Source of the DNA: Styela clava
Lineage: Eukaryota
Assembly (NCBI RefSeq): GCF_964204865.1
Contig: NC_135255.1
Coordinates: forward strand, 930,001 to 994,000
Direction: 5' to 3'
Length of the DNA stretch: 64,000 bases
Below are positions 4,053 through 53,233 of this stretch, in pieces. The number at the start of each line of letters is the position of its first letter. Position 1 is the first letter of the stretch. The notes under the pieces were generated by a model that worked only from the letters and a program-made list of their open reading frames with translations, was not told the origin of the DNA and ran no database searches. The translations under genes and the position numbers were made by a program.

Positions 4053-4538
4053 TTAATTCGTGCTATTATTGGATCTCCATTTCACCGTGTTTGTTGGAGG
4101 AATACCGGTCATTCTCTTTTTATTGTCTGTGTCTCGTGAAAAGAAGTACCCACATGTTGGCTTTCCTAAACTTACGAAAGGTGCAAGAGAGTTGACGTTC
4201 GTCATCCACATTGCAGCTCTAACACTGTCAGGTGTTGTCGTCGGACGAAAGGGCTGAGGCCTCACTGCTCCTCTAACTTCTCCGGATCTCGTGTTAGAAT
4301 GTCTGACGAACATGTCGCTTCCTGATGCTGGTGCTTTGCTGCTGTCTTGCAAATGCCTCGAATAGTAAAGATATAAAATATCCTGATTTTTATCCGTGAC
4401 TACCCGATTGCTTGCGTTCATAGGAAGCCAAACCGTCTTAAAAGCATTTAGTTTCGGAGTTCTTGCGAAATACTGAAATTTGATGTAAGGCAGATCTCGT
4501 TTCCCCACCGTTGTGCGTTGTAGAACTGGTCCATTCAT
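4053..4538 (-). CDS. Uncharacterised 161-aa basic protein, probable single coding exon
   Basis: This is the longest non-repeat ORF on the supplied track (open 4053-4616, first ATG at 4538, MNGPVLQ...KWRSNNSTN*). It is GC-richer than its flanks, has AATAAA on the minus strand at 3824-3829 and a perfect CRE at 4793-4800. No family recognised. Confidence 0.6.
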   Translation of the reverse strand: MNGPVLQRTTVGKRDLPYIKFQYFARTPKLNAFKTVWLPMNASNRVVTDKNQDILYLYYSRHLQDSSKAPASGSDMFVRHSNTRSGEVRGAVRPQPFRPTTTPDSVRAAMWMTNVNSLAPFVSLGKPTCGYFFSRDTDNKKRMTGIPPTNTVKWRSNNSTN

Positions 4539-4792
4539 ATTTAATCTGAGCGAATTCCTTGACGAGCAATTTGCAGCGGGGGACCTCTCTCTACAATTAT
4601 CCTTTGCCAGGTGCACTACTATGTTTTTCTGCTACGATCTCTTCTATTTTCTACGAAACATCACCCTAACCTTTACCCTATCCTAATAAAACGAGCGCTC
4701 ACACGCACCTATTCACAGTTATTCTTTGTTGTTGTTCTATGATACTGATTGTCTCATTTGTGCATCGCTTCGGTTTTGAACGTTTTAGATTA

Positions 4793-10092: not shown

Positions 10093-10452
10093 GGCGCGGC
10101 GGCGTGGCTCAGGCGCGGCGGTGTGGCTCAACGGGCTAAGTGTTAGGAATACGCTCGCCACCGCACCTCTAACTACTCTGCGTGGGTTCGCAGGTTCGAA
10201 TCCCATGCAGGGATGGTTATGTGCGAGAGGATTGCTGGACTCCTCGCCGTCGTTGCGTGGTTCACGTAACCGCTGGTCGGTTACGGCTTCCTCCACCACC
10301 AAGTCCATGCTACCGAAAACAAACAATACAGTAAAACTAATCCCATACCCGACTTGGAATGGTAACCGGACGAGAGGCCGTGGTTCGCCATATGGATAAG
10401 CCGTCTTATCTGCTTTCCTCTCCCCGGGATAAATATGTAAATCCTATCCTAT
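10093..10452 (+). mobile_element. tRNA-derived SINE, full length, with duplicated 19-bp 5' end
   Basis: Pol III A box tggctcaacggg and B box ggttcgaatcc, ~250-bp body and (atcct) tail. Near-identical copy at 53971-54310 (-) and partial copy at 20203-20341. Confidence 0.9.
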
Positions 10453-16900: not shown

Positions 16901-19220
16901 AGTTACTAGAGTCCAACTTTTTTTTAAAAGTTTCAAATTTGGAATACCCCCTTTTTATTGTTCCATAAGTAAATAAGAACTTTTATAATATGTTTTGGAG
17001 CATATTCGGTTTGTTTTACTCTTTCTCGTGGAAAATTATGGGCGAGTAGAATATGGAATTAGACTGTTTCTGAATAGCACAAAGGGGTTGCCCTGTGAAA
17101 AAAGTAATGATTGTATGCCATATCTAGAACAACCAAGGAGTGGACTTCTGCAGTCATCTGTTGTGACCATGTATACAATGTATCTTACTTGGTCTGCAAT
17201 GACAAACGAACCTGATCCAACCTGCAATCCCAGTCTGCTGACTATTGTACAGGTCTGTACTTTATATTGTGTAATCGATAGGATCTATAGTTATGAGTAA
17301 TGTGTGATTCATCTATATTGTCAGTGGTGTCAGTTTAAGCATTCATGAGGTCAGTGACCTACATGAACTATTTATTTATCGTTCAATGTTTGCGATGTGA
17401 AGCAGACTTGATATTTCCAAAAAGTCTGCCAGCAAAAGTTTGTTATTAAATGTGCTATTTAGTCGACTAGTTCTCCATTTTCCCAAATAGACCTGAATAT
17501 TCAATATCATTGTCTATGCTGCATTAATTCCTCATTTCTATATTTCAATTATTGGTGTAGGAAATCACTCATCCTGGAGATATTGCCCCATCAGCAGGGA
17601 ATGTAACAACACCAGTTCCTACCAAACACGAAAAACAGCTGTGGGATGCTCAGAGTATACTTGGAATTGTTGTCTTCTTCGTCTGTGTCATTTATTCAAG
17701 GTATGCATTCAAAACAGTTGGAATATTCATTCTATTTTGGCTGCTTTGAATAAATCAAAACATAAAAAAGTAGTAGAGTAGTGTTTGTTATTGTTAACTT
17801 ATTATTATGCTGCTAATCCTGAAAAACATAAAACACACATCCGAATATAGAAAAACATTTGAATCTACTTGGTATCATTAATTAAAAATAATCTGTCACA
17901 TGAGCCGTGTTGTATGTATTTAAATTCATTCAAAGTCATGTGATTAGAATTAATGATTATCCTGGGATAAATATCAAAATCTTATCCTGTTATCAAATTA
18001 TTCTCATCCAAAACTTAGTATTTATTTTGAATAATAGCATTCGAAGTTCAAGTCAAAACAATGTGGATCGATTAACTTTGACTGAACATGTTGTTCTTGA
18101 TGAAGAATCAAGTGGACAAGATGCCGAGGTGAGTTGCCTGGAATAAAAAGAACATGTTTTGTTTACTCTGATGTAACAGTGTTTCATATGACAATTCTTA
18201 TACAAGTACATGATTATGATCTCTTGTTGTACTCCAGCAACCATTTTGTTATTTTTCATGGTAACACATTGTGTTCAAATTTATGACTGGTCGTGTCTGT
18301 ATTGTATTATATTATTTTCTAGTCTTCTGACAAGAAAGATGCCGAATCTAAGGTTCATGACAATGAACAAGGAGGTGTTGCATACTCCTATTTCTTCTTT
18401 CACTTCATGTTCTTCTTGGCATCCCTATATATCATGATGACTTTGACCAATTGGTACCGGTAAGTCAACATTTTTAACTATTCTAATCAACATTTCATCT
18501 GTGTGTATAGGAAGTGATGAGGTATCGTTGAATTTCATAGATGTTTTATATCAGAGAGCTGTGAGCTGACCTCTAAGTCTAATACTTGTTTTAATTTTGA
18601 AACTAAATAAGTGATGCCTTAGGCCATATCACACGAATAAACCAGACTTAAGACGCAATAGCAGCAGCTCACTCAGAAGTTGTTACAAAATAAATGGAGG
18701 TTTTGTGAAACTAAACGGCCTATTTGAATTGAAATTGCATCACATTATAAGGATTGTTATTGTTTCTCTTCATTGTAGCCAGTATTTGTGAGGATCCACC
18801 AGGGCCTTGAGGTTGGGAAACACTGTTCTAAACAGGCTATTCAAAATAATTATAGTAGAAAAACAATTGAAAATGTTAAATGAAATTAGCGTTTACCAGA
18901 GAAATCAGAATAGGTCATTAGGACTGTTTAAGTTGAGAACATTGAATCAAATTATAATATAGAAATCCAGTTATATGTGCATTTCTTTATCCATCTTCAG
19001 CATGAGTTTCAATTAAGATAAAAAAACTAAAAAATAAAATGAATCATTCTCACAGTTTAAATCATGTCGATTATATTACAGTCCTGATGAAACCTTTGAA
19101 AAGATGCAAACGCAATGGCCTGCTGTGTGGGTGAAAATAGTCTCGAGCTGGTTGTGCATTGGACTATATATCTGGACCCTCGTTGCTCCTATCTTTTTGA
19201 CAAATCGTGACTTCGACTAA
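10911..19220 (+). CDS. SERINC: Serine incorporator (SERINC/TDE family, SERINC1/3-like), 12 coding exons, 456 aa
   Basis: Exons 10911-10934, 11147-11308, 11851-11915, 12413-12508, 13235-13364, 13732-13899, 14007-14100, 17128-17252, 17561-17700, 18038-18128, 18323-18459, 19082-19220 sum to 1371 nt. All introns are GT-AG and phases agree. Family motifs: [107 protein letters not shown]. Confidence 0.97.
11365..11603. mobile_element. Palindromic MITE in SERINC intron 2 (GG termini, 8-bp TSD; Merlin-like)
   Basis: Imperfect TIRs ggatttttttgtacaaaacc / ggctttgtgcaaaagatcc, inner inverted arms ttagtaattat...ataattactaa, and flanks ctattttt / cgattttt. Superfamily assignment is inference. Confidence 0.55.
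14322..16638. mobile_element. 2.3-kb non-autonomous hAT element in SERINC intron 7
   Basis: Perfect 8-bp TSD gttttaac (14314-14321, 16639-16646) and imperfect TIRs caaggatggccaa / ttggacaaccctg. Clusters of ttcgaa(ta) subterminal motifs sit at both ends, with internal inverted and tandem repeats. Confidence 0.85.
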
Positions 19221-32200: not shown

Positions 32201-35200
32201 AAAAGTGTAATTGGTAATTATGCTTTACCCACCCATTATGATTTTAACTGACATTTTCCCATCGGTAATCTTCACCTTTTCAATGTACGTTTTTTATTTA
32301 GATCGTTAACAACACTTGGACTCGTAATAAGTTCACTTGCTGATCAAGCCTCTGGAAAATCAAAAAATAAGTTCGTGCCATACAGAGATTCAGCATTGAC
32401 ATGGATATTGAAAGTAAGTGTGATATTTTCGAGGTTATAAGTGATTTTAAGACGCAGTCTCTATTTTAAAATAGAGCGATGATATTGTTGAATCGTGAAT
32501 ATTTGGCAATGACTCGACGCAGTTCATCTATTTCATATTCAGATTAAAATTGTTTTGTCGATAACAAGTTTAGCTGCCACTGATATTTATTATGATTTTG
32601 CTTACCTTCTTGCAGGATAATTTGGGTGGGAACAGTCGAACTGCTATGGTTGCAACAATCAGTCCATCGGCTGATAATTATGAAGAAACGTTATCAACAT
32701 TGAGGTTAGTTATAAAATTTTCTTTCTGAAATAATTTTTATGTTTTATTTATAATAACGTACTTACTTCCAAAATAACAAAATGTCTCCTGAATCTCCTC
32801 TTCTGGTATTAAGGTGTTATATTTAATAATAAACTCATTTAATTTGAAATGGAATGAGATCTTAACTGTAATTTTTCTGACTATTACTGAGTGTGATGGA
32901 GTTACATTTGAACGTCTGTGTTCCATATTATCAAGCTGTGATATCAAATTCTAGGTATGCTGATCGTGCTAAACGAATTGTCAACAAAGCAGTTGTTAAT
33001 GAGGATCCAAATGCTCGTATCATCAGAGAATTGAGGGAAGAAGTCGAAAAATTACAAAATCAACTCAAAGAATCAGAAGTGGGTGAACTTATTTCATATA
33101 TCAAGTTATCAACATATTTCAGGCTCAATTACCATGATTAAGTTTGTTGTCTGCGTGATCAAATATCGTCAGTGATTTTAGTAGAGTTTTACACATTTCA
33201 GTTTTCGGACAAGTTTATTTGATTTTACAATTTATAATGTAAAAATATTATCGTTATGAAATATTCATTTCATTGAAGTTTTGTTAATTCTATACTAAAA
33301 CTAAATGACATTGATAACAAAAATCCATAGTAAAAATTTTGGTGTTGAATATATGATATTAAAATGAATATGAGATGTATTTTTCTCTTTAAATCACATT
33401 CAATGTCATTTTTGTTGGTGGAAATGAAGTTTTTCATCGACTGTTCATGATTGTTTCAGAGCATGAGAGCCCCAGAATTGAAAGAAAAATTAGAGCAGAG
33501 TGAAAATTTAATTAAAGAAATTTCGCAAACATGGGAAGAAAAATTACGAAAAACAGAAGCTGTTCACAAGGTATTTATAATAAATAATTGTAGATAACCC
33601 GAAGACAATGAGATTCGACTTGTATCATGCTTGATTTTGTGGTCATTTTTAACTATTAAAAAATATTTTTTTAGCAACGTCAAGAAACTCTTGAAAAAAT
33701 GGGTCTTTCACTAGAAAAATCCGGGATAAAAGTCGAAAAGACAAAATGTTTTCTTGTGAATCTCAATGCTGATCCATCTCTGAATGAATTGCTTGTTTAT
33801 TACTTGAAGGTAACAAACAGTTAACTAACTTGATTGATTTCATTTTGACAGAATAAATACTGTATTACAAATTACAATATACTTCAATCAATTAAGGAAT
33901 TAAAAAAGCTGTTAATTTATTTTTATTCTATAAATTGTTGATGAAAGATTGTAAGAATTTAGTACAATTTTGTTTTTGAATATTTACATATATTAATTTG
34001 CTGGAGTAGACTGCACTTGTTGCCCCATTATCTCCTTGTATAACCTTTCAAATTGGTTTCATAAATTCAGCCTACAACAACAGTTGGTCAAAACGAAGAG
34101 AGCGATATGCAACTCAGTGGTTTAGGTATTTTGGATTTTCATTGTCATGTGGAAATAACTAACGAAGGTGGTGTTTTCATTACTCCTATGAAAGATGCAA
34201 GGTAATTGTGATTTATATTTTGGTTTTTAGTTGGGGAATCTCATTTTTGTATCAAGCTACTATGAACACCAAAATACAAAAGCCCATGCAATATTTTTTT
34301 TATTATCTAATTTTATAATTCGTAGTGCCAAGCCATGAGTTCTTATGGCATTATTATGTGATCAGTCATGTACTTGCTCTCCATACATGATACATACATA
34401 CATCATACTTAATACGATTCTGACCTTTAAACAAGAATAAGCTAATCAACTTCATAACAACTTCATGACCTGCATTAACATACAGTTATCACATCTATTT
34501 TACTTTAATACTAAACATAATTCAAATTTTCCAACGCCTTCAAGATTTCTATGTAATGTTTTGAGTGATACTAAAAATTGTTTTACTGTGACAAAAATAT
34601 CCGAATATCTTAGCTGGGAACTTATGTTTCTGAATTTTGATGTTCTTAGTTACACATGTTTCTTTATGTCATTCAAATCTATTTCAATTGCACAAGATGT
34701 ATATGTAGTATTACTATATTGTGATTATCTTATGTGTTGCTACGCCTAAATCAATCATTTTAATTTATTAATAGATTTTGAAATCAATATTATGGTGATG
34801 ATAATAAAATATTATGTGTTCATGATCAGACTGAGACTTATTAATAATTATGATAATACTCAGAAGGAGATCATAAATGCATTTAATTTATGAAATACAG
34901 ATGCAAATTTAATAAGGTCCTAAAATAATAATATCAATAATATGATATACTAATGCTTAACCTAGTGGTTTTCAATTCATTTATTATTATTTAAATAAAT
35001 TCTTATTTGAGAAGTACAACATTGCATCTATTTTTGTGGGACTTATTTTGTTGATTTATTTCAAGGAAGTAAAGGTATGGGTATGTTGAATTAGAAATAT
35101 GGGTATTTTCCTGCAATAAAACAATATTTTGATTTGGTCCAATTTTTCAGAACATGCATAAACGGTCAAATAATCAACTCAAGAACAAATTTGCGACATG

Positions 35201-38200
35201 GAGATAGAATATTGTGGGGAAACAACCATTTTTTTAGAATAAATATTCCAAGGATTCCTCGTCTTACTCTGACAAAACCTGAAAATGAACAAAAGGATAA
35301 AGAACCATCAGATGGTGACAAGATACCACCTTCAGGTAATCTGCGACTTTTAGGCGCTTCATATTTGATTTGCATCATGAGAATTCAAAGGAATTCACTG
35401 AATAAAAATCATGATAGAATTCAAATTTAAGTTTCTTGAAACAGTTGAATTTGGGGCATATGGCATGGTTTTTCTCAATTTCCTGATTTAATCTCATTGT
35501 CTGTTGTCATGTTATAAATTATTGATGTATTTTTTCAGAATCAGATATATCATTGAATGAATCTACAATAGATTATGAATTTGCACAAAGAGAGGTTTTA
35601 ATGAATCAAGTTGAAGGTTAGTCAATGATTATTTTGTGTGTGTGAGGATTTTAAGCATTGATAATACAGGCACAAACATTCCAATAAAACTAGTTCTTTT
35701 ATTCTTATAGATGTATATACGGTAGATTGTTTTGTTATATTTATAATAACACCATCTATTTTTACCCTCTTAATATTTGGATAGCAATGTATGGCATTGT
35801 TCAAATTTTGTGTTATGTAACTGAAATTTTAAATTCTGCTTCTCTTCAGCAGCTAATGAAAAATAAAATATTTCGTTGAAAAAGCCTGAATTCTATGTCT
35901 CCTGGTTGATTTTGTTAGATGTACTGTCTGTCTTGAACCAAGCCCTTGTATTTTTGTTATTTATTTATTATCTTTTGGCACTAAAGTATAAATACTAAAT
36001 ATGTAAATTTTTTCTAAATATCCAGCTCCAATTCAAGAAACTATAATGCATCTTGAAAATGAATTCAAACAACTGACTGATGAAACTAATTATTCTACAC
36101 TAGATATTGATGAAAGGAATAAATATGAAGAGGTAATGTTCACATATTTCTACACAACTCAACATGGCTACGTGTTTATCTATGACTCATTATAGGAAGT
36201 AGCCAGGTTTTTTCTATTGTTTTACAATCTTTTATTGACTTCATGTATATTTTGCAAATTTTGTATGTATTACTTTTTTTGAATTATTGTTTGAGCTATA
36301 TTTTTAAACATTAATCAGATAGTTGTAATTTTTAGTTATCAACTTTTCATGTTTTTATTAAACCTATTTATACCAAGTTTTGTGGAGTGACATGGCATGA
36401 CTTATGCTTATTAGAGATTATTAGATATCAAAATTTATTTCTAGGTAGCATTTTACATAGTTGCAAAACTATTGGGTTATGCACCTCCCTAGTACTATCC
36501 ACCAAGCATTTGTGTCTGATCTTCTTGTTATTTGAATAAGTGCTTGGGCTATGTGACAACAATAACATGAATGCAAGATGTTTATTTCAACTTTGCCTGT
36601 TTTTAGGAAATACGAGCTCTCAGACAACAGTTATTATCTCTTTCGCCTCGAGGTAGTTCAGATTCGCTCGACCCTCCTCCCGAGATACCAGAGGATGAAC
36701 AAAGGAGAAAATCACCTCTCAATGGAAACAGCACAAATAACATACCTTTGCAATATAAAGATTGGAAAAAAGAAAGGTGAAAAAATTTGCAAACAAGGAA
36801 GTTTTTCCTCTAGAAACAATAATATTGAGATTTTTCAATACACACAATGCTAAAATATTTTATTCATGAAAATGTCAGGAATAACCAGCTACACTGTGGT
36901 GTCAAGAAGTTGCAAGAAGAATTGGTCAGAGCACAAGCTGCTGTTCAGGAAGCTAATTACCTGGCTAAAGAAATGAACAAAGAAACTGAATTTCTTGTCA
37001 GTTTACAAATTCCTGCTCATAATCTAACTCCCAACAGAAAGGTAATGGTATCTGATATAATTAATGCAAAATTTGTTTTTTAAATCTTCATATTCGCTGA
37101 TGGCCGCAATACTTCTTCGAAAAGTGATAAAACAGAATGACTGATTCGTCACAATTTTTGAGAATAAAATAATATCTTGTCTTGCTGAATATTTTTGTTT
37201 CTGTCAACACTCTTTAAATGGTTCCAACATTTTCCCATTTTTAGAGAGGAACGCTACTTTGTGTACCAGCAATTCAAGTTATAAAAAATGGTAGAGATTG
37301 CCAAGTATGGTCCGTTGAAAAGTTGGAAAACAGGCTTGCTGATATGCATGATGTTTATGAGGAATATAAGGAAAATACAAATAAGGAGGTCAGTTCACAG
37401 CATAACTTACACAAAAAATAAATTGTATTAATTGATATTGTAATAATTCTTCAATTTCAAATTGGACATTGGGACTGAAAAATCTTTGCATATACTGTAC
37501 CTGTAAGGCATTGATATCAGGTTTATTTAATTATGCTTTTATGCTACAGAAAAAGTTTTTTTCTCATATTCTCATTCGGTTTTAACTTGTTAACAATATT
37601 TATACTAATTTTGTTGCAAATGAACTCGATTTTCAGGAGACAGATTCATCTGATTATGATCCATTCATCGAAACGGAAAGAAATCAATTATTGATAGGAG
37701 TTGCAAATGTATTTCTCACTTGTTTATTGCAAAACCAACCATTCAGATATCCTGTTCCAATTATTGATCAACATGGACAGGTAGTATTGGATTTGATTTT
37801 TATTTATTCTTATACTTGCGAATATTTAGCAGTTGCGAAAAATATTGTTTATAAATACAGTAAAGTATTTTTACTCTCGGTTTCAAATTATACTGCGTAC
37901 TAACCAGACAAAGGAAAGGGCAGTTTTTCACCATATGATTAAGATGTTTTACTGGAATAATGGATAAATATAAAATGAATTATAATAAATATGAATATAT
38001 CTTACTCTGTATTGCTCAGCAGAAATGCTGTAATGTCTAAACATATTCAAACCAGTCATCTTTATTAAGTTTTAAAACGTCTTTTGTAAATTAGGACTTT
38101 GGTTTCAGCTACCCCTTCTTGCAATATTAGGTAAATATGCTTTGTTGTTGAATTGAAATTTAATTTCTTTCAGTGCCATTCTTGGTTGCTATTGTCAGTT

Positions 38201-41200
38201 TTGAACAGTATAAATTTTCTAGTAACTTTTAAGTAAGTTTTAAGTTTTTCTAGTAGCGTTTAAATATCTCTAATAATAATTTGTTTCACCAGGTTGCGGG
38301 AAAACTTCTTGTTGAAATTCACAGAATATCTGGTTCAAGCAATCAGGAATCAATGACACGAACTACAGACTCAGACACAAGTGATGACAGTATATTATCT
38401 GATGTATCAAGTTCTGCAAGTAGTGGTATCGGATCTAGTCTTTGTACTGATGTAGTAGCTGGATCGCAAACAGGTGCAAATTAAACTGTTAAAGTGCTTT
38501 ATTTATTTGGTTTTCAATGTCTTAATGCCTTAGTTTTGAGATGCTTAGAATTTGTGGATGGGTCAATAGTGGAAGATTTCTTCAAAAATCACATGTGTTG
38601 TGTATGAATTCTTTCAAAAATTTTGTACCAAATCAAGATTCTCAATTATGTGACGAAATGAACTTGAAGTGAGAATATAATTTCCAAAACACAAAAGTAA
38701 AATACATTCTAACTAAATATTAAACAACATATTACTACCACAAGTTATTATTCAAGAATTTGCTCTAACAAACATTTTGTTTGGTTCAGTGAATCAACTA
38801 ACAATAGAGAATCATAACATGAATACGTCGTCTTCGTCATTATTCAATTCATCATCTTTATCATCATCTGTTCCTGTTGAGTTATCGTCCAGTTTATCCA
38901 ATCATCGATATCAACAAATGACATGCAGGTAGGATTTTTTGTTTTATTGTTTCATTCAAATTTCATTTCAAATTCTAAATTGTGACATCTTTTTACACAG
39001 AGTGACTGTTATTGAAGCTCAAGGTTTATCTTCTACTTTATCACATTTTGTACAATGTCAATATTATTTTTTGAATTGTCCCGATGTAATTCTTGTTCCA
39101 CCTGATTTAAGTCCTGAAGAATTATCACCAAAGGGCAGGTAAGTTGATACTCTCATTTATTTGTTCTACATGATGTTAGACTCGAGTGTAAGTCTGGTTA
39201 ATGTGAAAGAAGTAGCATTGTTGGAAAATGCTGTAACCAAATAGTTTGTGTTACATTCTTTAAACAACAATTTTTGAACGAGAAAGCGACTAGTGCAATC
39301 TGCAGTTCTGATGTTCAAGATTATTTTTGACTTTGTTCTTACTTCGCCGCTATGAATTGACTCTTATGTAAGGATAGCATTGTTTCAGTTTGCATAGGCT
39401 CTCTCTTTGACGTAGTTAAACGAATATTATTGTTCTACACGAATCCCAAAGGACTGTTTTGCCAATTTTGGTTCACTCTTTGAATAAATTTGTCAACTAT
39501 TGAAAAAACTAAATCCTGAAATTATATTTTACCCTAGATTCTCATTTTATTTTTAATACTCAATTTTGAAAACTATTTTTGTAAATGTGAGTTATTTCAT
39601 TGTTTGTTGTTATTCTCATTTTGTATGAATTTCTTGTGGATAAATTTGATCTTTCGCTTTAGTTTATATCTTAACTTAGTTGTTTTATATTTCATCTATC
39701 TCAACTTTTTACAGGGACTTAATTTACTATTATCTTACATTTATTTACTTTGCTAATTTAATTGCTAACCTGTTGTTAGATTTTCCAAGCATCACATAGT
39801 TCAATCTGTAGGCTCTGGATTGACAGAAAATCTAGATAGCTGATGTCTATTTGGTATAAAATCCAATCCATTTTTTCAGTCGATCGACTTTAAATATAAA
39901 GTTTCATCACACAATGCAATTCACATGTAACATCACTGAAGATCTTATTGATAACATCAATTCTGGATCATCACTCGCTATCGAAGTGTGGGGTCACAGA
40001 GATCGTTACAATAATTTGGGTTCGGACGGAGATATTCCAACTAAAATTCAAGATAAAGTTCGTTCGTCCAGCCTTTTGTCCGAGAAGCATAAATCCTTAA
40101 CTGAGAGGTTTATTGTGTTTTTGTTCACATGTCTTTTTGATGTTTTATCTAAAATATATTTGTTGGTTTAGTGAAAAGGCAAGCTATTCTATACCTGCAA
40201 GAAATTTGAATAAATTTTGTATCTTCTTGTATTGGGGTATATAAAGATGTAGAAGAATAGTATTAATAGCTTCTCTGTTCAATCTGTCTCAACTTCTCTA
40301 ATTTATCCCATATAGTTAGACGAAATCGAGAATTTTTACCCAAACTATTTAACGAATACCATTGTGAATGGTGAAAACACCTGCATTTTGGGGCCAGGCA
40401 ATCATCAGTTGAACATTATTTGCCTTGTAATTTCAAATCTTAAGGCACTGATAATACTAAAGACTTCATTAAAAATAATCAGCTAGGTTTTTAGAATTGA
40501 TGATAAATAGATAAGTTATCGGAAGCACATAGAGAATTGTTAGGGAAGAATAAAATAATTGATTTTTCAATGTTTTCCTTTATTTAGATGGAGTGAAGTA
40601 ATAAAACGAATCAAATTAGAAATTATAATTCTGGAACTTGGTGAAAATGCTGAATATGTTCCAGTTGAAATCGTTAATAAATTAGATGTGTTGAGTAAAG
40701 GTGTCTTTGAACTGAAACAAGTAAGTGATTATGTTGTTACTTGTGTTTTTTTCATTCCCTGACATACTTTCTTGCTATTCAATATAGGTCTCGAATAAAT
40801 ATGCTCTCTGTGTGAGTTGCTGAATCAGGGTTGCCTAAAACAAATAGGAAGAATTTAGAATATTTTCTTGAAAATATAATAATATAGGCTTAACTTTCGA
40901 CACTGAAATTGAAAAAATTTTTATCAAAATTATTCTGCATTGCCAAATTCAATTTCTATTAATTTACAATGATTTCTACATATTTCCTTTTTCAATTTAA
41001 AATATTCTAATTTTAAAAATATACTATAATAATAGTACAAATCTCTCTCTAGGGCCAATCAAGGCGAATTGAAGTATCTGTTGAGACTGTACAAAACTCA
41101 GGAACTTTACCTCTAATTGTCGACAGTATTGCTTCTGTGTATGCAGGGAGTGTCCAATCTGGGAGTGCAAAGGGTCAAAGGTCAGTTTCAACATTTTGAT

Positions 41201-44200
41201 ATGCAAGAACTATTCATGATCAATTTGGAATTGTTTGCATCGGTGTTGTCAATCATTTGGATATCTGTTGTTAATAGTTATTGGACACAGACAGTTTAAA
41301 ACACAAAAGGATTCTTCGAAATATTTATTTAAACTCTGAGAACTCTTACAAAAGAATTTCCATATCACACCGGATTTCAACTTAATAAGAAATTAATTTA
41401 GTATGGTCTCTGGATAATACCCTACAAATTTCAAATTGAGGAACAGCATGGCTATATTTGTCTTTGTGTAAAAGTATTTAAATTTATTTATAAATTTCAA
41501 TAGCAACCTAATCGCAAATTCCTATTTTTTTAGCAATATGGACAGTTACCATGACAATGATTTAACAAACTTAAGAAATACTTGGCTTGATATATTGGAG
41601 AAACGTAAAGATTATCTTGATCAAGAAATCAAACGACTTGCTAACAAGGGTAAATACATCTTGATTTGAGCTGCAGAAGCTTTTTTTGAAACTGTCATCA
41701 GCTTTTTGCATGATAACGTAAAAGTTTTGTTCTCGTATAATATTGAATACTGCATATAGAAGATATTGTGTATGTTTCTTCAGCTGATAAAAGTTTACTT
41801 GAACAAGAGAGAGAATCTCGTTTATTCGATCAATGGTTGACCTTAACAGAAGAACGGAATTCTTTAGCAACTCCTCATGCTGGTATTCCTGGTGCACCTG
41901 CTTCATGGGATCCTCCTGATTCTATAGAAATGCATATTCCTGTCTTGTTTTTGGATATCACAGGTATGATGTGCAATCGGTACCTTGTGATTGATTATAT
42001 CATGTGCAATATGGCAATACTTGATGTGTATTTTGATGTTTTCACTTCAAGATAAAGTTTGTTCGTCCAGCCCTTTGTCTGAAAAGCATAAATCCATAAA
42101 AACACAACAAATCTTTCTGTTAATTTTATGCTTTTTTAGACAAAAGGCAACATATTGAAATGAATTTCAATTGCTTACAATCAATTTTTTAATTTTACAA
42201 GGGTTTTTGATTTCACATATACAAGATATCTATTTTATCTTATCCTTCTTGCTATTTGTAGGTGATGATTGTAAAAATGAATTACTTCACAAACCACGAG
42301 GTCTCGATAATATGTTGCCGAATGAACTGCCTGGAAATTATATCGAAGTTCCAATCATAAGAGCGGGAACTGATGAGGTTGGTAATATTTGTTATTTTGT
42401 TAAGATTTCCAAATTTTTTGTTACGAGTTGCTTCAGCATTTTTAAGTCTTCGTAGCATTATTTTGATTATTATTTTATATGTCGTCTCGTATTGTAATAA
42501 TGTATTTATACAGATGCACAACCATCTTACTGCAGTTGCATCGTGGGATTCATCATTACATGATTCAATATTGTTAAACAGAGTTACTCCATCTAATGAG
42601 CAAGTCTATGTTGTAATACAGGTAGTTTGTTTGTCTATTTTGAAAAAATAACTGTGTTAATATTATTATGTAATATTTATAGTTTACAAAGCACAGCAAG
42701 TGTGAGCAAACCACAGTCCTCAGACTGTATACAGCTTGTATTGAATTATCATACGACGCTCCATGTTTTATATGGATAAAAGAATCATTTATGAGAAAAC
42801 AATGGTTGATTGCTACAGGTCCTTTTTTGCTAAAAAATGGCCATGATGAAAAATATTTGTTGGATGTTTTCTATATTTCCGACAACGAATATTTGTGCAA
42901 TAACATGTAATCATTCCTGAAGGTATACAAGAATAAATATACATGCTCCTTGACAAATATTAATTTGCAGGCTTTGCTGAGTAGAGTATGGCTCCTGATT
43001 TTTAAAAATTTTTACAGGTAACAGGGTCCATTTTCGTCATTGGTGGAATTAGAAAATTGAATATACTTGCAATTTAGTTAAAATAAAACTTTATCAGTTA
43101 TGAGAACACTGCATCAATAGAAAGTGCTGTCCCCGGCTAACTTATGTGACCCCCGAGCCAAAACAATAACACTGGTCTACAAATGTTGTAGACATAATGT
43201 TATGTGCTGACAACACCAAAACCTTGGATTCATTTGATTCCCAACCATTGCGTCAATGTATTTTTAAGTTCAATCCTCTTACGCTAATTAATTCAGGACA
43301 TTTTTACTAAGTACTCAAATGGACTGCAACCGTCTGCAAGGTCTGAAAACCCATTTACGGAATTGAATTTTTTATTTATTTTTCCAATTAAGAGAAAGTT
43401 ATTCTATTTAATTCTAAATTCTTTCAATTCAGGTTCATCTTCGATTAAGCCATCCTGTAGATATGTCCATTGTTTTGAGAAAAAGAATTTGTGTATCCAT
43501 ATATAAACAGCGAGGAATAACTGCTTTTATGAGAAGAAGAATGCAAGGGAAGGTATGTGTTTAATAAGCTTTCATATTTTCTCAACGAAGATCGGGGTTT
43601 GTTGAAAGTTGGGTGAATCCATTTTGCTGCAAAATCATGATACATACCAAGTTTTGCCACTTTTATTTATCAAGAAATGGCAATATGTGTCTCAAATTTG
43701 GACTGTGGAAATATGTAATTTCATAGATGAATTGTTATTTTTTGTTAATGGGTGAATCCATGATATACTTCTTCCACTTTCTTAGTTATTGCGATCATCT
43801 GGAGTGATATATGAATTGGTATCGAGCATTCCATTATCATCTCAAGACAACGAAGACCAGGAATCTCTTGCTATTATGGCTGCTTCGGGAGTGGATTCAA
43901 ATGTAAGTGTTTTTTGTCTCCTGTCTATTGATCTATTTTGGCATATGGACTTAGATAAAATGCAATCGAACACAAACAAACTTTTATTTTCAGGATACTA
44001 CTGATGACAAAGTTTTAGATGATAATAATGATAAATCAACAAAAACTAAAAAGAATCCATTCGAATCATATGTAACTCGGTCGATGCAATCTGTAGATGA
44101 TATTTTATCTCTCGATAAAATTCGACAACAAGTTACTTTACGAGAAATTATTCATGCACATAAACAGAAACAGGTACTTTTATAATGTAATAATAATCTT

Positions 44201-47689: not shown

Positions 47690-48410
47690 AAGCGTTGTTT
47701 GAAATAGACTAGTGGATCCGTTAGCTCAGCACAGTATATGTATTCAAATGGCCACTGAAGAAGATACCGAGTGCGACAAGTCTAACAGGATGAGGGAAAT
47801 GGGAGGCACCTGCAACGCCACCGCCACTTGAAACAGAAACTACTTAAACGGAAGTTTAGATTTGCAAAATCCACAGGGTGACCTCAAAAAACTGAACCCA
47901 TAAATTTCATTAATTTCCAGTTAGTGGTGCGCATTTCCTACAGTCAGGATGTCAATAGCAACAATTATGTTTATTGAGGCACAGCGCCACGAAGGAAGTC
48001 GTACGAAGACAACTACACTCGGTAGATTGCACGACACGGGTAATCATTTTCAGACATGGCATAATTGGTTTGCGGACGAGGATGAACGAGCTCAAGTCGT
48101 GAATAGGGAACGTTAGTGCTGGACATCACTTGTACGTTTTAGAGGGATTGATAGAGGCAACGAGCAGTTACAGCATGATGGGGCGACCCCCATTCAAATC
48201 ACACCCTTGACTGACAGAGCGATTTCAGTGAAAGCCGATATGATCTGCAATGACGCCGAGTGGGCACCTCATTCATCGGGCTTGACCCGTGAACTCAGCG
48301 CAGAAGTCAGAGCAATCCCCATAGAGAAGTCTGTGCGAGTGATGGACAATTTTGCTAACGCATTCAAGGGTGTCTCCAACGCCGAGGGGGGCATTTGGAA
48401 CATATTCTGA
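47690..48410 (+). mobile_element. Decayed Tc1/mariner-superfamily (rosa/maT-like) transposase remnant
   Basis: Fragments VNRER*, QHDGATP (48171), WAPHSSGLT (48261) and AEVRAIPIEKSVRVMDNF...EGG correspond to TVNGERY, QQDGAPPH, WPPRSPDLTP and the C-terminal NF..R..C....GGH motif. Many stops; TIRs not resolved. Confidence 0.7.
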
Positions 48411-49165
48411 AGAAAACGTATTTTTTTGTGCAAAACGTGCAAAAAGAAAATTGATTAATTCACTCCATTTTTGTAGCAGTTAGTTAAGTAATTTATAGGT
48501 TCTGTTTGTTTTTTCTGATTTTTTTACTTTCACATTATACATCTGCCACAATAATGACTATTTTGACTATTCAAATTAGTCTTGAAACATTTCACGGTTA
48601 GTAATGTTGCGAAACATTATCAGTGTTAGCAACTTTTATTGCCATTAATTTAGGATCATCTATCATGCAAGGCAAATGTCAATATGATAATTATAATAAT
48701 AAATAACAAGAGAGCAATGTTCAAATATATGGATACGAAGGTTAAATGTTTACGGCCTAATTTAGCATAAAATTACCCTATTTTGAACCCCTCGTTTCAC
48801 AGACAAGTAATGTGTTTTTTGGGTATATCTAAATAGTCGACAATCTTGAAATCGGAGAACTGTGCTTCCGACAAAAACAAATACCCCATACGACAATTTA
48901 GCAAATCGATTCTTATGCATTCTTCGTGTCAATAAGACTTATTCTTACAGGTGTGAATTGTGTTTATTGGAATGCGCCAAAGCGCGATTTAGCAAGCAGC
49001 AGCGATTATCGCAAGTTTTCAGCTTACTGCTAGGAATATTTGATAAAATCACATGCATCTCAAATTACTAACAGGAACCCAGTTTCTAAGGATTTAGTTC
49101 AAGCGCAAACTACCGTGAACGAATATGATAAAACAAATATTTGTAAAACACGACTAGATGGTAGT

Positions 49166-50624
49166 TTATAAGTCTGATGAGGGCATTTCCCACCAGTTTT
49201 CACCACTCATTTTTGTAGGAGATGGCGACGCACTTATTTGACCCCATGGGTCAACAAATATAGTTTCTGTTTCAACATGAGAGCCGTTCTGAGAAGTAAC
49301 ATATGATGTAGTTGCGTTCGGTGGGTTTTGATATACAGATTTTGACATATATGCATTTCTAGTGACGATTGAAGATTTTCTCTCAGGGACAGGTGGAGGA
49401 GGATCAAAATTCTGAGCACCTGCTGTTTTTGCTCTTTTAAATTCATCATCGGCTCTATAATATTCGTCTTCCTCCACCATCACAAAATCACAATGTCTAT
49501 TGTCTCGATTCAATGCCCTTCGTCTGTTAAAATAATATGATAAAACAAGGGTCGTACTAACATTTGAGCCCGAAAAAATTGTAATAAATCCGCAATAACA
49601 ATAAGTATGTAATGCTAAAACTACACACTACGAAACCAGGATGATAAGAGTTGTGGCAAATATGCAACAGCACGTCTCTTATTAACGCAGACGTTGATTA
49701 AGTCTATAACATATTCTTCTTTTTTCGCGATAAAAATATCATGCATTCGCATTCAAAAAAAAAGGTTCGCTACCTTAATGATAAACCAGGGGCGTAGCCA
49801 GGCGGATGGCTTTGGGGGTCGGAACCTCCCCCTTCTGAAACGTAAAAAATCTAATAGCATCCTTCTGTATCATACATAGCAATTTTGTGTAGCTTAAACC
49901 CTCAAGACTCACGAAAACACATGCTTCCGGCGTCCCGCTAACCGTTTCGAACTAACTTGGCTAAATAGAAATTTTACCTTTGGTAATTTCTGGCAACCCT
50001 CCTGTGATAAACATACCTCTGCAATTTTAACTTCATAAGAAAAAAACGTGAATCATATAATTCATAGTCACGTTGGACTTGTAGTAAGGTGTGAAACTAT
50101 TTCATTGAAAAAATTAATTGAATGTATGCAATAACAGGTTAATTTTCTCATGCAAAGTGGTGTTAAACTTTAATTTCTCACACTGGGCAATACCACAGAA
50201 AATAAGGACTTCCAGAAGTATGCGCACCAAGATGATGCACGACCTGAACATAGTGTGTGTACCGGTTAGGATTCAGGTTGTGCGACATCTTGGTGCGCAT
50301 ACTTCTGGAGCACCGAAAAAAATGGGAAGAAAAAGTTGAAGTCGTGACAAAGAATTCAACACAATATCATTTCTGAAATTTATGACATTTCTCAAATGTT
50401 TTACGTAACACAAAACAACTGTTGACATTAAACACGACTTACTTTCTCGATTTCGCTTGGCAGAACAGTAGCAACAAGAATCCCATCAAAATCGCTGAAA
50501 ACATTATTCCATATGGAATAATCCATGATTCGATCTGCCCACCATTTTTCAAATGCTGTAATCTAAGTTGTGCTTGAATTTCTTCCGTAATATTGTTGCT
50601 TCTCACCCTAATTTTCTTCACCAT
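49166..50624 (-). CDS. Uncharacterised 179-aa single-pass type III membrane protein with adaptor-like tail (2 coding exons)
   Basis: Exons 50624-50443 (donor gtaagt) and 49523-49166 (acceptor ttttaacag) join in frame (540 nt). An in-frame stop lies upstream of the ATG (50670-50672), and AATAAA is on the minus strand at 48963-48968. One hydrophobic segment WIIPYGIMFSAILMGFLLLLF is followed by CQAKSRKRR. Confidence 0.8.
49787..49835. mobile_element. Probable PIF/Harbinger-type MITE end
   Basis: caggggcgtagccagg..ggggg..aacctcccc is a typical Harbinger MITE terminus. The partner end was not found. Confidence 0.4.
50211..50309. repeat. ~100-bp hairpin / mini-MITE in the intron of the membrane-protein gene
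   Basis: Perfect 24-bp inverted repeat tccagaagtatgcgcaccaagatg (50211-50234) / catcttggtgcgcatacttctgga (50286-50309), continued inward by gcacgacctgaa / ttcaggttgtgc. Confidence 0.85.
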
Positions 50625-52302
50625 TTTACAATTTTTTTTTCCAAATTTTACAAGTGTGCTGGTATACGGCTATATTACCGTAACGATGATAACTAGGGTA
50701 TAAATGCCGAGAAATAGAAAATCAACAGCAATGCAAACGAATTAGAACAAAAGTTACAGAACAAAGTGAGAATAGATGTTGAAAAAATGCTTTATATCGT
50801 TGTCCCCTTCCTCATGGAGAGAAACAATTTATTAAAATACTGTATCCCAATCGTAATAGGAAACCCGATAGTGTCCTCCAGATCTTCATAGATCAGCACA
50901 ATCTTGTACAATGTACATAAATGTCAACTTAACTTCCGGGTATAAATTGAAGTGTAAAGTCACATACAATAACATAACACTCGGGCGAGCTATATGCATC
51001 CGGTCCCAATTCATTACAACCTAACGTTAACATCAAAAGTTTTACTAGTGCATCCTACTAGGTCAAGTTCTATATTACGATACTCGTTTGATAAAATAAT
51101 ACAAAGCGTGTGCGATTGAGACTGAATCACGTGAAACGTTTAAAAATGCCGACAGTTTTTTCCAAAACTGTTAAAACCTATTACTTCCGTAAACCCCAAT
51201 CGATGCAGATGATGATTACTGATATAAAGTGAAGAAAACTAGTCTTTCGACTTTGGAACTCATATCCTATCTATTTTAAACTGAATTTCATAAATAGTTT
51301 CAAGTACGTCCTTGCTTTCTCTATACAGTATCTCATCGCAAGCGATTTCATCTTTGCACAGGTTCTGAGTTCAGTCAACGGAGAAGGTGTTGTGACGGCA
51401 TAAATCAAATTACTGTATAATAATCCACATTATCAACTTATCGAACACAGACAGCGTTGATACCTCCCATTTCGTTGTCTACGTGATTCGTTATCTTACG
51501 GATTCGGTAGGAGTGATTCCAATTTGCTGCTTTAACCTGTTGAGCAATATCATAATTTTATAAACATGCTCGATGTCTGTTGACGATGAGCGAATCAACT
51601 GGTACTTGGAAACTTCCGTGTGTCGTTTGTCCTAGGTTAGTCGTCAAGAGCACTTGTCTATTCGCCATAATGCATGGTGTGTAATGGGTGTGTCCTGTCA
51701 TGTCGAGACGGCGGTTTGCACACCCGTACTCATTCAACCACTATACTTCGAAATAAACTATAATTTTTATCGATGTTCTAGTAAGCACTAAACAGCGATC
51801 AATGAACGTAAACTCATCACCATACTTTCGAGAGTAAGTTGTCATCATTTGAGTAATTGACGTTCAAGAACAAATTTCATATATGCAATAAAACATGCAA
51901 GGTATTAAATACAAGGTAACCTCAGAATATCACTTTTTGATATTTAACGATGCCCATAGCATACATGTCACTATCGGGTACGAGGGTGTGGAAACGTCCC
52001 TCAAAATCGTCATGGTGTATTCGAACTTTAGTCGGCCAGTTTCAAATAACACAAATTAGTGTTCTACAGCAGTCCGCGAAATTTCTCTGGTTGGGCCACT
52101 TTCATCGCTTTTTCACGACTAACAACAAAATTCTGGAATGAGTCTTCATTTTTTAATATCAATTAATGATAACATCATTAACACACTTCCCCGCTCGTAT
52201 ATTAAATTGTTGGAAATTATATGAGAAAAAATATTCGGGAGATTAGGCTATTAAGAGGCCCATCCATCGTTCGAATTTGAAACCGTGTTCGAACTCGTGA
52301 AG

Positions 52303-52338
52303 TGTAATGATAACGAATGCGCATTCGTTATCATTACA
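52303..52338. repeat. Perfect 36-bp spacerless palindrome
   Basis: tgtaatgataacgaatgc|gcattcgttatcattaca. Confidence 0.95.
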
Positions 52339-53233
52339 GGTTAAACATCACTCAATTACAACAGGGTCGTTAAGCACATCGTGCAAAGATTCAGGGAAAT
52401 ACTTGGAGGTTGATTATGTGTGGGAGGAACGCTAAACTCATCGACGATGTCAGTGCCGGTTGAATGCTTTTTTTGAATTAAGTGCATTAATTGAGTGTTA
52501 ATTTGTACAGAAACGAACTTGTTGGGTAATATTTGACTTGCTTATAAAACTATAATATCTTTTGTAGGTAATAAAACTTGGAACTTCCGTTGATGAAAGC
52601 CGGAAAGCAACTCAATTACTTGAGATATTTCATTATGATATTCTTTGTATATATTTGGAATCTTTCGGTAACCGTTGTCGACAAAAAGGTTTTGTTGACT
52701 GTTATATATTTTTCATTGAAATTTGAATATATATATATATAAATATTTCTGAGCTTACAATTGGCGGAATTCTGCGACATTTTCCCATTGTCGCATCCTA
52801 GACACCGGTCGACTTAAAACCGCATAGCTGCTTAAATGGAGTGTACTTCTTCTCTCTCATTTTTGCGGGATCAATCTTTTTTACGATAGACTTTCAACTC
52901 ATTCGTGGCGTGTAATACATTTCTTATCTTATGGTATTTGACAGAAATTATTTATTTACGTCGATTTTTCTTGCATATTCGCATGATCTTGATTCCTATT
53001 TTATCAAGTACGAGCGAGACGCTGATAGATTCCAACCCATCATATCACGCCAATTATGGCTGCTACTTTTATCAAATTTGGGTAAGTCTTAAATAAATAA
53101 TAAGGCCAACGTATCGCGAACATTCACGACCACATAACATTACTCAAGGTGGCTTACCGGAATCGATTCCCCATTTACATGTAATCGGCCATATTGTACG
53201 ACCTGACTCTATATTTTGCTTGGCGATCTCAGT

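What the first reader, a model, noticed from the sequence alone, without database searches (positions are those of the whole stretch)
49166..50624. Candidate LAT/NTAL/PAG-style transmembrane adaptor protein in an invertebrate-type genome
Seen in sequence: two ORF-track fragments splice in frame into one 179-aa protein with no signal peptide. It has a ~33-aa N-terminal segment with an N-I-T sequon, one TM helix (~W34-F54), a Cys right after it (C55) and a basic cluster KSRKRR. The ~120-aa low-complexity tail has no catalytic domain. The tail carries EEDEYY, PPPPVPER, YMSK, YQNP, YVTS, DPW and a terminal NWWEM motif. Established knowledge: vertebrate transmembrane adaptors (LAT, NTAL/LAT2, PAG, LAX) share this topology, several with a palmitoylated juxtamembrane Cys. 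pY-x-N binds the Grb2 SH2 domain, PxxPxR is a class II SH3 ligand, acidic residues before Tyr suit Syk/Src kinases, and DPW binds the AP-2 alpha ear. Inference: this could be the scaffold of an undescribed tyrosine-kinase or immune signalling module. Such proteins are motif-defined and fast-evolving, so homology searches easily miss them.
Basis: partly seen in the sequence, partly recalled or inferred. Interest (0 to 1): 0.8.

Follow-up and report, generated by a model that had tools for sequence, protein, structure and literature searches.

The report
Small sea-squirt membrane protein, function unknown
The two fragments are a real, spliced and expressed sea-squirt (Styela clava) gene for a 179-residue single-pass membrane protein with a floppy tail, but the tyrosine and proline motifs that suggested a LAT-like immune adaptor are missing in its more distant relatives, so it is an uncharacterised small membrane protein, not a demonstrated signalling scaffold.

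Summary
Minus-strand exons 50624-50443 and 49523-49166 are joined by a GTAAGT...AG intron. The joint appears in assembled contigs of four runs from three studies. The product is 98% identical over exon 2 to the 179-aa Styela clava RefSeq prediction 'uncharacterized protein LOC120332079'.

The protein has one TM helix with positive-inside charge and a disordered tail. No Pfam family matches it, and it is single-copy in its genome.

A full HMMER pass over 1.84 billion representatives found three relatives. Across all five sequences the invariant residues lie before and in the membrane: LKNGG-x2-E-x-W-x2-PY. The distant orthologue P0003 keeps Cys55, Cys72, PWG and the C-terminal NWW[ED]MPSSDL. 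None of the five tail tyrosines, the YxN, the PxxPxR or the DPW is kept outside the closest relative.

Best reading, inferred: a lineage-restricted accessory or adaptor subunit that docks through its conserved outer/TM part and carries a class I PDZ-type C-terminus. A LAT-like phosphotyrosine role is possible only as a Styela-level feature (about 10%).

The parts
50443..50624 (-). Coding exon 1: M1 to the first two bases of K61. It covers the outer N-terminal segment, the TM helix, C55 and the start of the basic cluster.
   Evidence: Translation. The exon end is fixed by the RNA joint and the GTAAGT donor. It matches residues 1-67 of P0001.
49524..50442 (-). Intron of 919 nt, GTAAGT...TTTTAACAG.
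   Evidence: The joint 49523->50443 is seen in contigs of 4 runs from 3 studies.
49166..49523 (-). Coding exon 2: the last base of K61 to L179, plus the TAA stop (49168-49166). This is the disordered cytoplasmic tail.
   Evidence: Translation. It is 98% identical to P0001 over 100% of the query. RNA contigs cover it.
50511..50552 (-). Codons for L25-Y38, the family signature LKNGG-x2-E-x-W-x2-PY in the outer juxtamembrane segment.
   Evidence: L25 K26 N27 G28 G29 E32 W34 P37 Y38 are invariant in all five family members.
50463..50525 (-). Codons for the TM helix, about W34-F54.
   Evidence: The Kyte-Doolittle 19-residue maximum is 2.3 at residue 35, with no second hydrophobic segment. AlphaFold2 gives a helix at 14-61; the 10-residue blocks spanning 31-60 average pLDDT 73-91.
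49169..49198 (-). Codons for N170-L179, NWWEMPSSDL-COOH. This is a Trp-Trp-acidic patch followed by a class I PDZ-type C-terminus (S-D-L).
   Evidence: 10/10 identical in P0002 and 9/10 in the 33%-identical P0003. A C-terminal [ST]-x-[LIVF] occurs in 2.4% of tail shuffles.
49244..49252 (-). Codons for D152-P-W. Only P-W-G is kept in P0003, which reads GPWG.
   Evidence: Alignment and motif scan.
49325..49333 (-). It is kept in P0002 (YRN) and absent in P0003 and P0004.
49379..49396 (-). Codons for P104-PVPER, a class II SH3-type PxxPxR. It is kept in P0002 (PPVPAR). P0003 has PPIVRR, which is not PxxP.
50670..50672 (-). In-frame TAG 16 codons upstream of the start ATG. No coding extension is possible within this exon.
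50791..50796 (-). TATA-like TATAAA about 170 nt upstream of the ATG. There is no ATG triplet between 50814 and the start codon. The transcription start itself is not determined.
   Evidence: This is sequence only and has not been verified by reads.
48400..49165 (-). 3' untranslated region. Contigs run colinearly from the stop to 48400 and roughly 730-800 nt further. AATAAA/ATTAAA signals lie at 48968, 48640 and 47975.
   Evidence: (records 7 and 13). Contigs are unstranded, so a merge with a convergent transcript is not excluded.

Best explanation
Shown: this is a real, spliced and transcribed gene of the ascidian Styela clava with two coding exons, already predicted in RefSeq as uncharacterized LOC120332079. 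It encodes a 179-aa single-pass membrane protein. The short N-terminus (33 aa) most likely faces outward, and a 125-aa intrinsically disordered tail lies in the cytosol.

It belongs to a very small, unnamed family: three further cluster representatives among 1.84 billion. The family's invariant residues form the outer juxtamembrane/TM signature LKNGG-x2-E-x-W-x2-PY. In the tail, the distant orthologue keeps only Cys55, Cys72, P-W-G and the C-terminal NWW[E/D]MPSSDL-COOH.

Inferred: the protein works as a small accessory or adaptor subunit. Its conserved outer/TM part docks side-on to a partner membrane protein. Its extreme C-terminus, a class I PDZ-type S-D-L end preceded by a Trp-Trp-acidic patch, ties that partner to a cytosolic PDZ scaffold or sorting machinery. 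Cys55 and Cys72 may be acylated. The tyrosine, SH3 and DPW motifs seen in S. clava evolve fast and are at most a Styela-level addition.
For: - Gene and splice: RNA contigs from 3 studies carry the exact exon joint. RefSeq holds a 179-aa model that is 98% identical over exon 2. An in-frame stop lies upstream of the ATG and the start has a strong context. The gene is single-copy with no intronless copy.
- Topology: there is one hydrophobic segment, and the 15-residue flanks hold 2 K/R on the N side against 6 on the C side. The N-termini of P0003 and P0004 are acidic.
- Disorder: AlphaFold2 with the family alignment gives a helix at 14-61 and pLDDT below 50 for residues 66-100 and 109-169.
- Family: the HMMER profile search returned P0002 (E 5e-116), P0003 (E 4e-13, covering 19-179) and P0004 (E 6e-4, covering 14-82).
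- Where conservation lies: the invariant columns in the outer segment and TM are L20 L25 K26 N27 G28 G29 E32 W34 P37 Y38 L51 L52. Against P0003, identity is 9/10 in NWWEMPSSDL but 11/55 in the middle of the tail.
- C-terminal motif: a C-terminal [ST]-x-[LIVF] arises in only 2.4% of tail shuffles and is kept in P0001, P0002 and P0003.
- Polymorphism: RNA contigs differ from the window at 2 of about 540 coding positions, against about 1-2% in the flanking untranslated sequence.
Against: - No partner, tissue or localisation is known, and the PDZ and docking steps are inference from sequence alone.
- P0004/P0005 lack the C-terminal block altogether, so it is not a family-wide feature.
- The conserved outer/TM signature could reflect insertion or oligomerisation constraints rather than a partner.
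- Both coding differences between the window allele and the transcripts are non-synonymous and lie in or just before the conserved C-terminal part (I157M, E169K).
Orthology versus paralogy and the taxonomic range are therefore uncertain.
Confidence: 0.4

Rival explanations
1. One reading: a LAT/NTAL/PAG-style phosphotyrosine scaffold. Src/Syk-type kinases phosphorylate the tail tyrosines, pY125-Q-N recruits Grb2, PPVPER binds an SH3 domain, and C55 is palmitoylated.
For: The architecture fits the descriptive definition of the class: a short outer stub, one TM, and a tail without enzymatic activity that carries Tyr motifs (PMC3342071). YxN, PxxPxR, DPW and four of the five tail tyrosines are kept in the 72%-identical P0002. 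All three motifs together occur in 0.17% of tail shuffles. Language-model neighbours include LIME1 and SCIMP clusters at 0.88-0.89.
Against: None of the five tail tyrosines aligns with Tyr in P0003 or P0004, and YxN, PxxPx[RK], DP[FW] and the acidic-Tyr cluster are all absent there. There is only one YxN, whereas five of the ten tail tyrosines of LAX lie in Grb2-binding motifs (PMC3342071). There is no CxxC. No Pfam adaptor family is hit even at E up to 10. The atlas scores are below the level that tool treats as more than a lead. The motifs were picked after the fact from a very large motif vocabulary, and conservation at 72% overall identity does not discriminate. The family's conservation sits in the outer/TM part.
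Confidence: 0.1
2. An ancestral Nedd4-type (WW-domain) adaptor. The family's original tail function was a PPxY motif recruiting a HECT ubiquitin ligase to a membrane partner, as in PMEPA1, NDFIP or Commissureless-type proteins. Styela has lost or degraded the motif.
For: P0003 (PPSY, residue 120) and P0004 (PPAY, residue 114) carry PPxY at the one tail column that is invariant in all five sequences, P129. The comparison with PMEPA1, NDFIP and Commissureless comes from my own knowledge and was not tested here.
Against: S. clava has NPPNATTSY and P0002 has NTPQASTSY, so neither has PPxY. The motif cannot explain the function of the window's own gene. Two occurrences of a four-residue motif are thin evidence, and no Pfam match to WBP-1-type or other PPxY families was seen.
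Confidence: 0.1
3. A kinesin-1 cargo adaptor. The C-terminal W-W-E/D acts as a tryptophan-acidic motif bound by the kinesin light-chain TPR domain, as in calsyntenin, SKIP and vaccinia A36.
For: A W followed by E/D is kept in P0001-P0003. The motif definition in PMC5450233 is a central W flanked by D/E. A poxvirus A36R cluster appears among the atlas feature neighbours at 0.88.
Against: The usual L/M at W-2 is N here, and an acidic residue follows the Trp on one side only. W[DE] occurs in 34% of shuffles. The atlas score is lead-level only.
Confidence: 0.06
4. A collectrin/ACE2-type transporter chaperone: true homology of the TM/juxtamembrane part to the collectrin domain.
For: Pfam Collectrin is the commonest weak hit, in 4 of 5 members with best E 0.0067. 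The family profile hits residues 740-779 of ACE2 in PDB sequences at E 6e-4.
Against: Scores of 12.6-16.4 bits (P0001 and P0002) lie far below the 27.1-bit cut-off. The match covers only profile positions 121-154 of 154, that is the TM helix plus basic stop-transfer cluster, and none of the collectrin ectodomain. The family signature LKNGG..E lies outside the aligned part. This is most simply convergence of TM composition.
Confidence: 0.04

Closest known systems
Vertebrate transmembrane adaptor proteins (LAT, NTAL/LAT2, PAG/Cbp, LIME, LAX, SCIMP), a functional class and not one homologous family
   Same: A short outer N-terminus without a signal peptide, one TM helix and a Cys at the cytosolic membrane boundary. 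A basic cluster follows, then a domain-free disordered tail with Tyr- and Pro-containing short motifs (definition in PMC3342071).
   Different: No sequence relationship was detected. There is a single Cys rather than CxxC, and one YxN rather than several. The tail tyrosines are not conserved in the distant orthologue. The outer stub is long (33 aa) and is the most conserved part of the family, whereas the outer segments of these adaptors are a few residues and not thought to matter. No immune context is known.
Small single-pass accessory subunits (collectrin/ACE2 C-terminal domain, FXYD, KCNE, TMIE)
   Same: The size class matches, as does conservation concentrated in the outer juxtamembrane segment and TM helix. 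There are weak TM-level hits to Collectrin/ACE2, and a TMIE cluster is among the atlas neighbours. ACE2 also ends in a PDZ-type motif (from my own knowledge).
   Different: No family reaches its Pfam cut-off. The collectrin ectodomain and signal peptide are absent. No partner transporter or channel is known.
Class I PDZ-ligand membrane proteins (C-terminal [S/T]-x-hydrophobic-COOH)
   Same: The C-terminus S-D-L-COOH is kept in P0001, P0002 and P0003 within a 10-residue block that is 9/10 identical at 33% overall identity.
   Different: Binding is untested, and P0004/P0005 end differently (…RLMV). The motif class is defined by three residues only.

Membership tests
Transmembrane adaptor proteins (LAT/NTAL/PAG/LIME/LAX/SCIMP class) | Short extracellular N-terminus, single TM, no signal peptide | tested here: met
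   A 33-aa hydrophilic N-terminus and one hydrophobic segment (Kyte-Doolittle 2.3 at residues 35-53). K/R count in the flanks is 2 against 6. Helix at 14-61. DeepTMHMM and SignalP are not available here.
Transmembrane adaptor proteins (LAT/NTAL/PAG/LIME/LAX/SCIMP class) | Cytoplasmic tail without enzymatic domain | tested here: met
   No Pfam domain in the tail. pLDDT below 50 over 66-100 and 109-169.
Transmembrane adaptor proteins (LAT/NTAL/PAG/LIME/LAX/SCIMP class) | Juxtamembrane CxxC palmitoylation motif (present in LAT, NTAL and PAG; absent in LAX) | tested here: not met
   There is a single Cys55 at the boundary and the next Cys is C72. Both are kept in P0002 and P0003 and absent in P0004/5. 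Acylation itself is not testable here.
Transmembrane adaptor proteins (LAT/NTAL/PAG/LIME/LAX/SCIMP class) | Several tail tyrosine motifs conserved among orthologues | tested here: not met
   Four of five tail Tyr are kept in the 72%-identical P0002, and none of five aligns with Tyr in P0003 or P0004. YxN is absent there.
Transmembrane adaptor proteins (LAT/NTAL/PAG/LIME/LAX/SCIMP class) | Tyrosine phosphorylation by Src/Syk kinases and SH2 recruitment | not testable with these tools
   Needs biochemistry.
Transmembrane adaptor proteins (LAT/NTAL/PAG/LIME/LAX/SCIMP class) | Sequence match to one of the Pfam adaptor families (e.g. PF15332 LIME1, PF15050 SCIMP) | tested here: not met
   hmmscan at E up to 10 on both exons and on all five family members lists none. 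There are only language-model neighbours at 0.88-0.89.
Collectrin / ACE2 C-terminal domain (PF16959) | Score at or above the gathering cut-off over the collectrin domain | tested here: not met
   12.6 bits (P0001) and 16.4 bits (P0002) against a cut-off of 27.1, matching only profile positions 121-154 of 154. The ACE2 match covers 740-779 only.
Class I PDZ ligands | C-terminal [S/T]-x-hydrophobic-COOH | tested here: met
   S177-D-L179 in P0001 and P0002, and SDL in P0003. Binding is not testable here.
Tryptophan-acidic kinesin light-chain motifs | Central W flanked by D/E, often with L/M at W-2 (PMC5450233) | tested here: inconclusive
   The sequence is N-W-W-E/D-M. The acidic residue after W is present, but W-2 is N, not L/M.
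PPxY (WW-domain-binding) small membrane adaptors | At least one PPxY in the cytoplasmic tail | tested here: not met
   There is none in P0001 or P0002. It is present in P0003 (PPSY) and P0004 (PPAY).

The most novel reading that the evidence does not exclude
In the Styela lineage this family has acquired an acidic Tyr cluster, a YxN, a PxxPxR and further tyrosines. On that reading it acts as a phosphotyrosine/Grb2 scaffold, an independently evolved functional analogue of LAT/NTAL in the sister group of vertebrates, built on an older accessory-subunit chassis.
Probability: 0.08. Interest if true: 0.6.

Novelty: new member of a known kind. Interest (0 to 1): 0.25.

Why it matters
Tunicates are the closest living relatives of vertebrates, and LAT-type adaptors are described only from vertebrate immune cells. 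A true tunicate counterpart would bear on how immunoreceptor signalling arose. The evidence here does not support that.

What it does give is a validated gene model and a first definition of a tiny orphan family. That definition comprises an outer/TM signature and a conserved C-terminal block. It also yields a concrete, cheap set of experiments. As it stands this is one of many uncharacterised small bitopic membrane proteins with a disordered tail.

Tried and rejected
- Pfam scans of both exons apart, of the public full-length protein and of all five family members at E up to 10 gave no family. The only recurrent hit was a sub-threshold Collectrin match confined to the TM helix.
- A PDB sequence search with the family profile hit only the ACE2 TM/basic stretch. 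I judged this compositional.
- The own-genome search found no paralogue and no processed copy.
- A word-based search with the family alignment added nothing beyond the four known proteins.
- Two metagenome-contig scans, one with the alignment and one with P0004, were blank.
The DNA, intron positions and source species of P0002-P0005, and dN/dS, could not be obtained.
It answered only for P0001, with lead-level neighbours.
- A literature search for the locus name found nothing. A search for tunicate transmembrane adaptors found nothing relevant.
- Fold search was not run, because a model with pTM 0.22 and a disordered tail would give meaningless matches.
- I considered a long 5' leader reaching 51599, as in the X1/X2 contigs, and left it open. 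A low-depth + strand splice (51633->52338, GT..AG on +) suggests a head-to-head transcript that unstranded contigs may have merged with this gene.
- Joined step left out: I did not type, join or search my own spliced model. The exons were searched apart, and whole-protein analyses used the public record P0001 returned.
Full report
**1. The observation**

On the minus strand an ATG at 50624 (context TGTAAAATGG) opens 60 codons plus two bases, ending at 50443. It is followed by GTAAGT. After ...TTTTAACAG the frame resumes at 49523 and runs to a TAA at 49168-49166. An in-frame TAG lies 16 codons upstream of the ATG (50672-50670), and no ATG triplet occurs between 50814 and the start. All listed motifs are present: most were located by pattern scan, and EEDEYY, YMSK, YVTS and NWWEM can be read in the protein sequence. 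NWWEM is followed by PSSDL and so is not strictly terminal.

**2. Is it expressed and spliced?**

The look-up of sequencing runs returned nine runs holding 11-49% of the sampled words of 49000-50800, and four holding 83-99%. The first pattern is what exons alone would give.

I laid X1, X2, X5 and X6, which come from three studies. In all four, contigs skip exactly 49523->50443, with CT..AC on the + strand, which is GT..AG on the minus strand. The intron is otherwise uncovered, apart from a short dispersed repeat. The genome contains only this intron-bearing copy, so the joined form must be RNA.

These are unstranded contigs, so they show presence but not strand, ends or level. Contigs run from the stop colinearly to 48400 and about 730-800 nt beyond. 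In X1 and X2 they also run upstream of the ATG to 51514 and 51599. A low-depth contig of X5 carries a joint 51633->52338 whose only canonical reading is GT..AG on the + strand. A head-to-head + strand transcript may therefore have been merged with exon 1. The true 5' end is undetermined, though a TATAAA lies at 50796-50791.

**3. Identity**

Exon 2, searched on its own, hits a 179-aa protein named 'uncharacterized protein LOC120332079' of Styela clava at 98% identity and 100% coverage. It also hits a 179-aa protein from a Logan assembly at 70%.

The window is therefore from a tunicate, and the gene model is already in RefSeq, without function. Whole-protein work used P0001.

**4. Properties**

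- There is one hydrophobic segment (Kyte-Doolittle 2.3, residues 35-53) and no second one. The flanks hold 2 K/R on the N side against 6 on the C side.
- The N-termini of the distant relatives are acidic. All of this points to N-out/C-in.
- AlphaFold2 with the family alignment gives a single helix at 14-61. The 10-residue blocks spanning 31-60 average pLDDT 73-91, and pLDDT is below 50 for 66-100 and 109-169.
- No Pfam family matches either exon or the whole protein.
- There are no paralogues in the genome.

**5. Relatives**

The word search and family scans left the protein open, so I ran the full HMMER search with the P0001/P0002 alignment over 1.84 billion representatives. It gave three hits at E <= 0.001:

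| Protein | Length | E-value | Query residues covered |
|---|---|---|---|
| P0002 | 179 aa | 4.7e-116 | 1-179 |
| P0003 | 168 aa | 4.3e-13 | 19-179 |
| P0004 | 124 aa | 5.8e-4 | 14-82 |

A second word search with the five-sequence alignment added nothing. All come from Logan or JGI assemblies on contigs of about 1-1.4 kb and carry no names.

**6. What is conserved**

Across all five sequences, the invariant columns apart from M1 are L20, L25 K26 N27 G28 G29, E32, W34, P37 Y38, L51 L52, D68, V77, N99 and P129. This amounts to the signature LKNGG-x2-E-x-W-x2-PY just outside and at the start of the membrane helix.

Identity to P0003 by segment:

| Segment | Identical to P0003 |
|---|---|
| Outer juxtamembrane segment | 7/17 |
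| Middle of the tail | 11/55 |
| NWWEMPSSDL | 9/10 |

P0003 also keeps Cys55, Cys72 and P-W-G.

None of the five cytoplasmic tyrosines of the S. clava protein aligns with a tyrosine in P0003 or P0004. YxN, PxxPx[RK], DP[FW] and the acidic-Tyr cluster are absent from both. P0003 and P0004 instead carry PPSY and PPAY at the invariant P129 column. Styela has NPPNATTSY and NTPQASTSY there, so no PPxY.

In composition-preserving shuffles of the tail, motifs arise at these rates:

| Motif | Shuffles with at least one |
|---|---|
| YxN | 29% |
| PxxPx[RK] | 11% |
| DP[FW] | 4% |
| All three together | 0.17% |
| C-terminal [ST]-x-[LIVF] | 2.4% |

The joint figure is not a fair test, because the motifs were chosen after reading the sequence.

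**7.

By the definition in PMC3342071, transmembrane adaptors have a short outer segment of a few residues, one TM, often a juxtamembrane CxxC, and a tail whose tyrosines are phosphorylated and recruit SH2 proteins. LAT has nine conserved tyrosines and LAX has ten tail tyrosines, five of them in Grb2-binding motifs.

The topology and the domain-free tail are met. CxxC is not met. Conservation of multiple Tyr motifs is not met beyond the 72% relative. No Pfam adaptor family is hit. The atlas lists LIME1 and SCIMP clusters at 0.88-0.89 alongside TMIE, SMIM33, opalin, stannin and poxvirus A36R. This says 'small bitopic protein with a disordered tail' and no more. The conservation pattern is the reverse of that of LAT-type adaptors.

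**8. Best explanation and rivals**

The shown parts are the gene, splice, topology, disorder, family and conservation map.

The inferred part is that the conserved outer/TM signature docks the protein to a membrane partner. The conserved C-terminus, a class I PDZ-type S-D-L preceded by W-W-E/D, then links it to a cytosolic scaffold or sorting factor. I give this about 0.4.

| Rival | Confidence | Main point |
|---|---|---|
| Ancestral PPxY/Nedd4 adaptor | 0.1 | Does not apply to the Styela proteins themselves |
| W-acidic kinesin-1 adaptor | 0.06 | Motif incomplete against PMC5450233 |
| True collectrin homology | 0.04 | Match limited to TM helix plus basic cluster, far below cut-off |

**9. 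Surroundings**

The neighbours are unrelated: a CIMIP3-like ORF (4053-4616, minus strand), Serinc exons (13690-17300, + strand) and a kinesin-3-type gene (DUF3694 at 42373-42651, + strand). Nothing suggests an immune or kinase gene cluster.

**10. Verdict**

The gene is a new, uncharacterised member of the broad kind 'small single-pass adaptor or accessory membrane proteins'. Interest is modest.

An earlier follow-up of this scan on other DNA of the same genome (s1-812124) reached a similar conclusion for another tyrosine-rich tail. I did not test that finding.

Noticed in passing
window 50211-50309 (inside the intron): A 38-nt inverted repeat, 92% complementary, with a 23-nt spacer. RNA contigs pile up here at depths of thousands with many different loose ends. 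It looks like a MITE-like dispersed repeat embedded in many transcripts.
   Followed up: partly
window 51516-51633 joined to 52338-52455: A low-depth contig of run X5 (depth 2.6) skips 704 nt. The only canonical reading is GT..AG on the + strand. This suggests a spliced + strand transcript lying head-to-head with the gene. Unstranded contigs of X1/X2 reaching 51514 and 51599 may be merges of the two.
   Followed up: partly
window 47949-48410 (+ strand), within or just beyond the 3' UTR: Two + strand ORF fragments of 55 and 67 aa in a locally GC-richer patch. By eye they resemble the C-terminal part of a Tc1/mariner-type transposase. This was not tested with any tool.
   Followed up: no
window 54062-54394 (-) and 10121-10399 (+): The two ORF translations are nearly the same (WLNGLSVRNTLATAPL..TLRGFAGSNPM.GWLCARGLLDSSP...). 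This is a dispersed repeat present in both orientations in the window. Pfam found nothing in the overlapping + strand ORF 53976-54398.
   Followed up: no
window 61628-63824 (- strand): A series of long ORFs with a recurring 'TCPDS/CPDCI...LVMLVS...' peptide theme. The 62001-64000 bin shows strong GC skew (+0.28) and AT skew (+0.35), consistent with a tandem or satellite-like array. Pfam found nothing in 61628-62218.
   Followed up: no
window 49235 and 49201: The window allele differs from the RefSeq protein and from all RNA contigs covering these two sites by two non-synonymous changes (I157 for M, E169 for K). There is no synonymous difference in the coding sequence. Both changes lie in or just before the most conserved C-terminal part.
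   Followed up: yes
window 4053-4616 (-), 13690-17300 (+), 35134-42651 (+): Neighbouring genes are a CIMIP3-like ORF, Serinc exons and a kinesin-3-type gene (DUF3694). None is related to the finding.
   Followed up: partly
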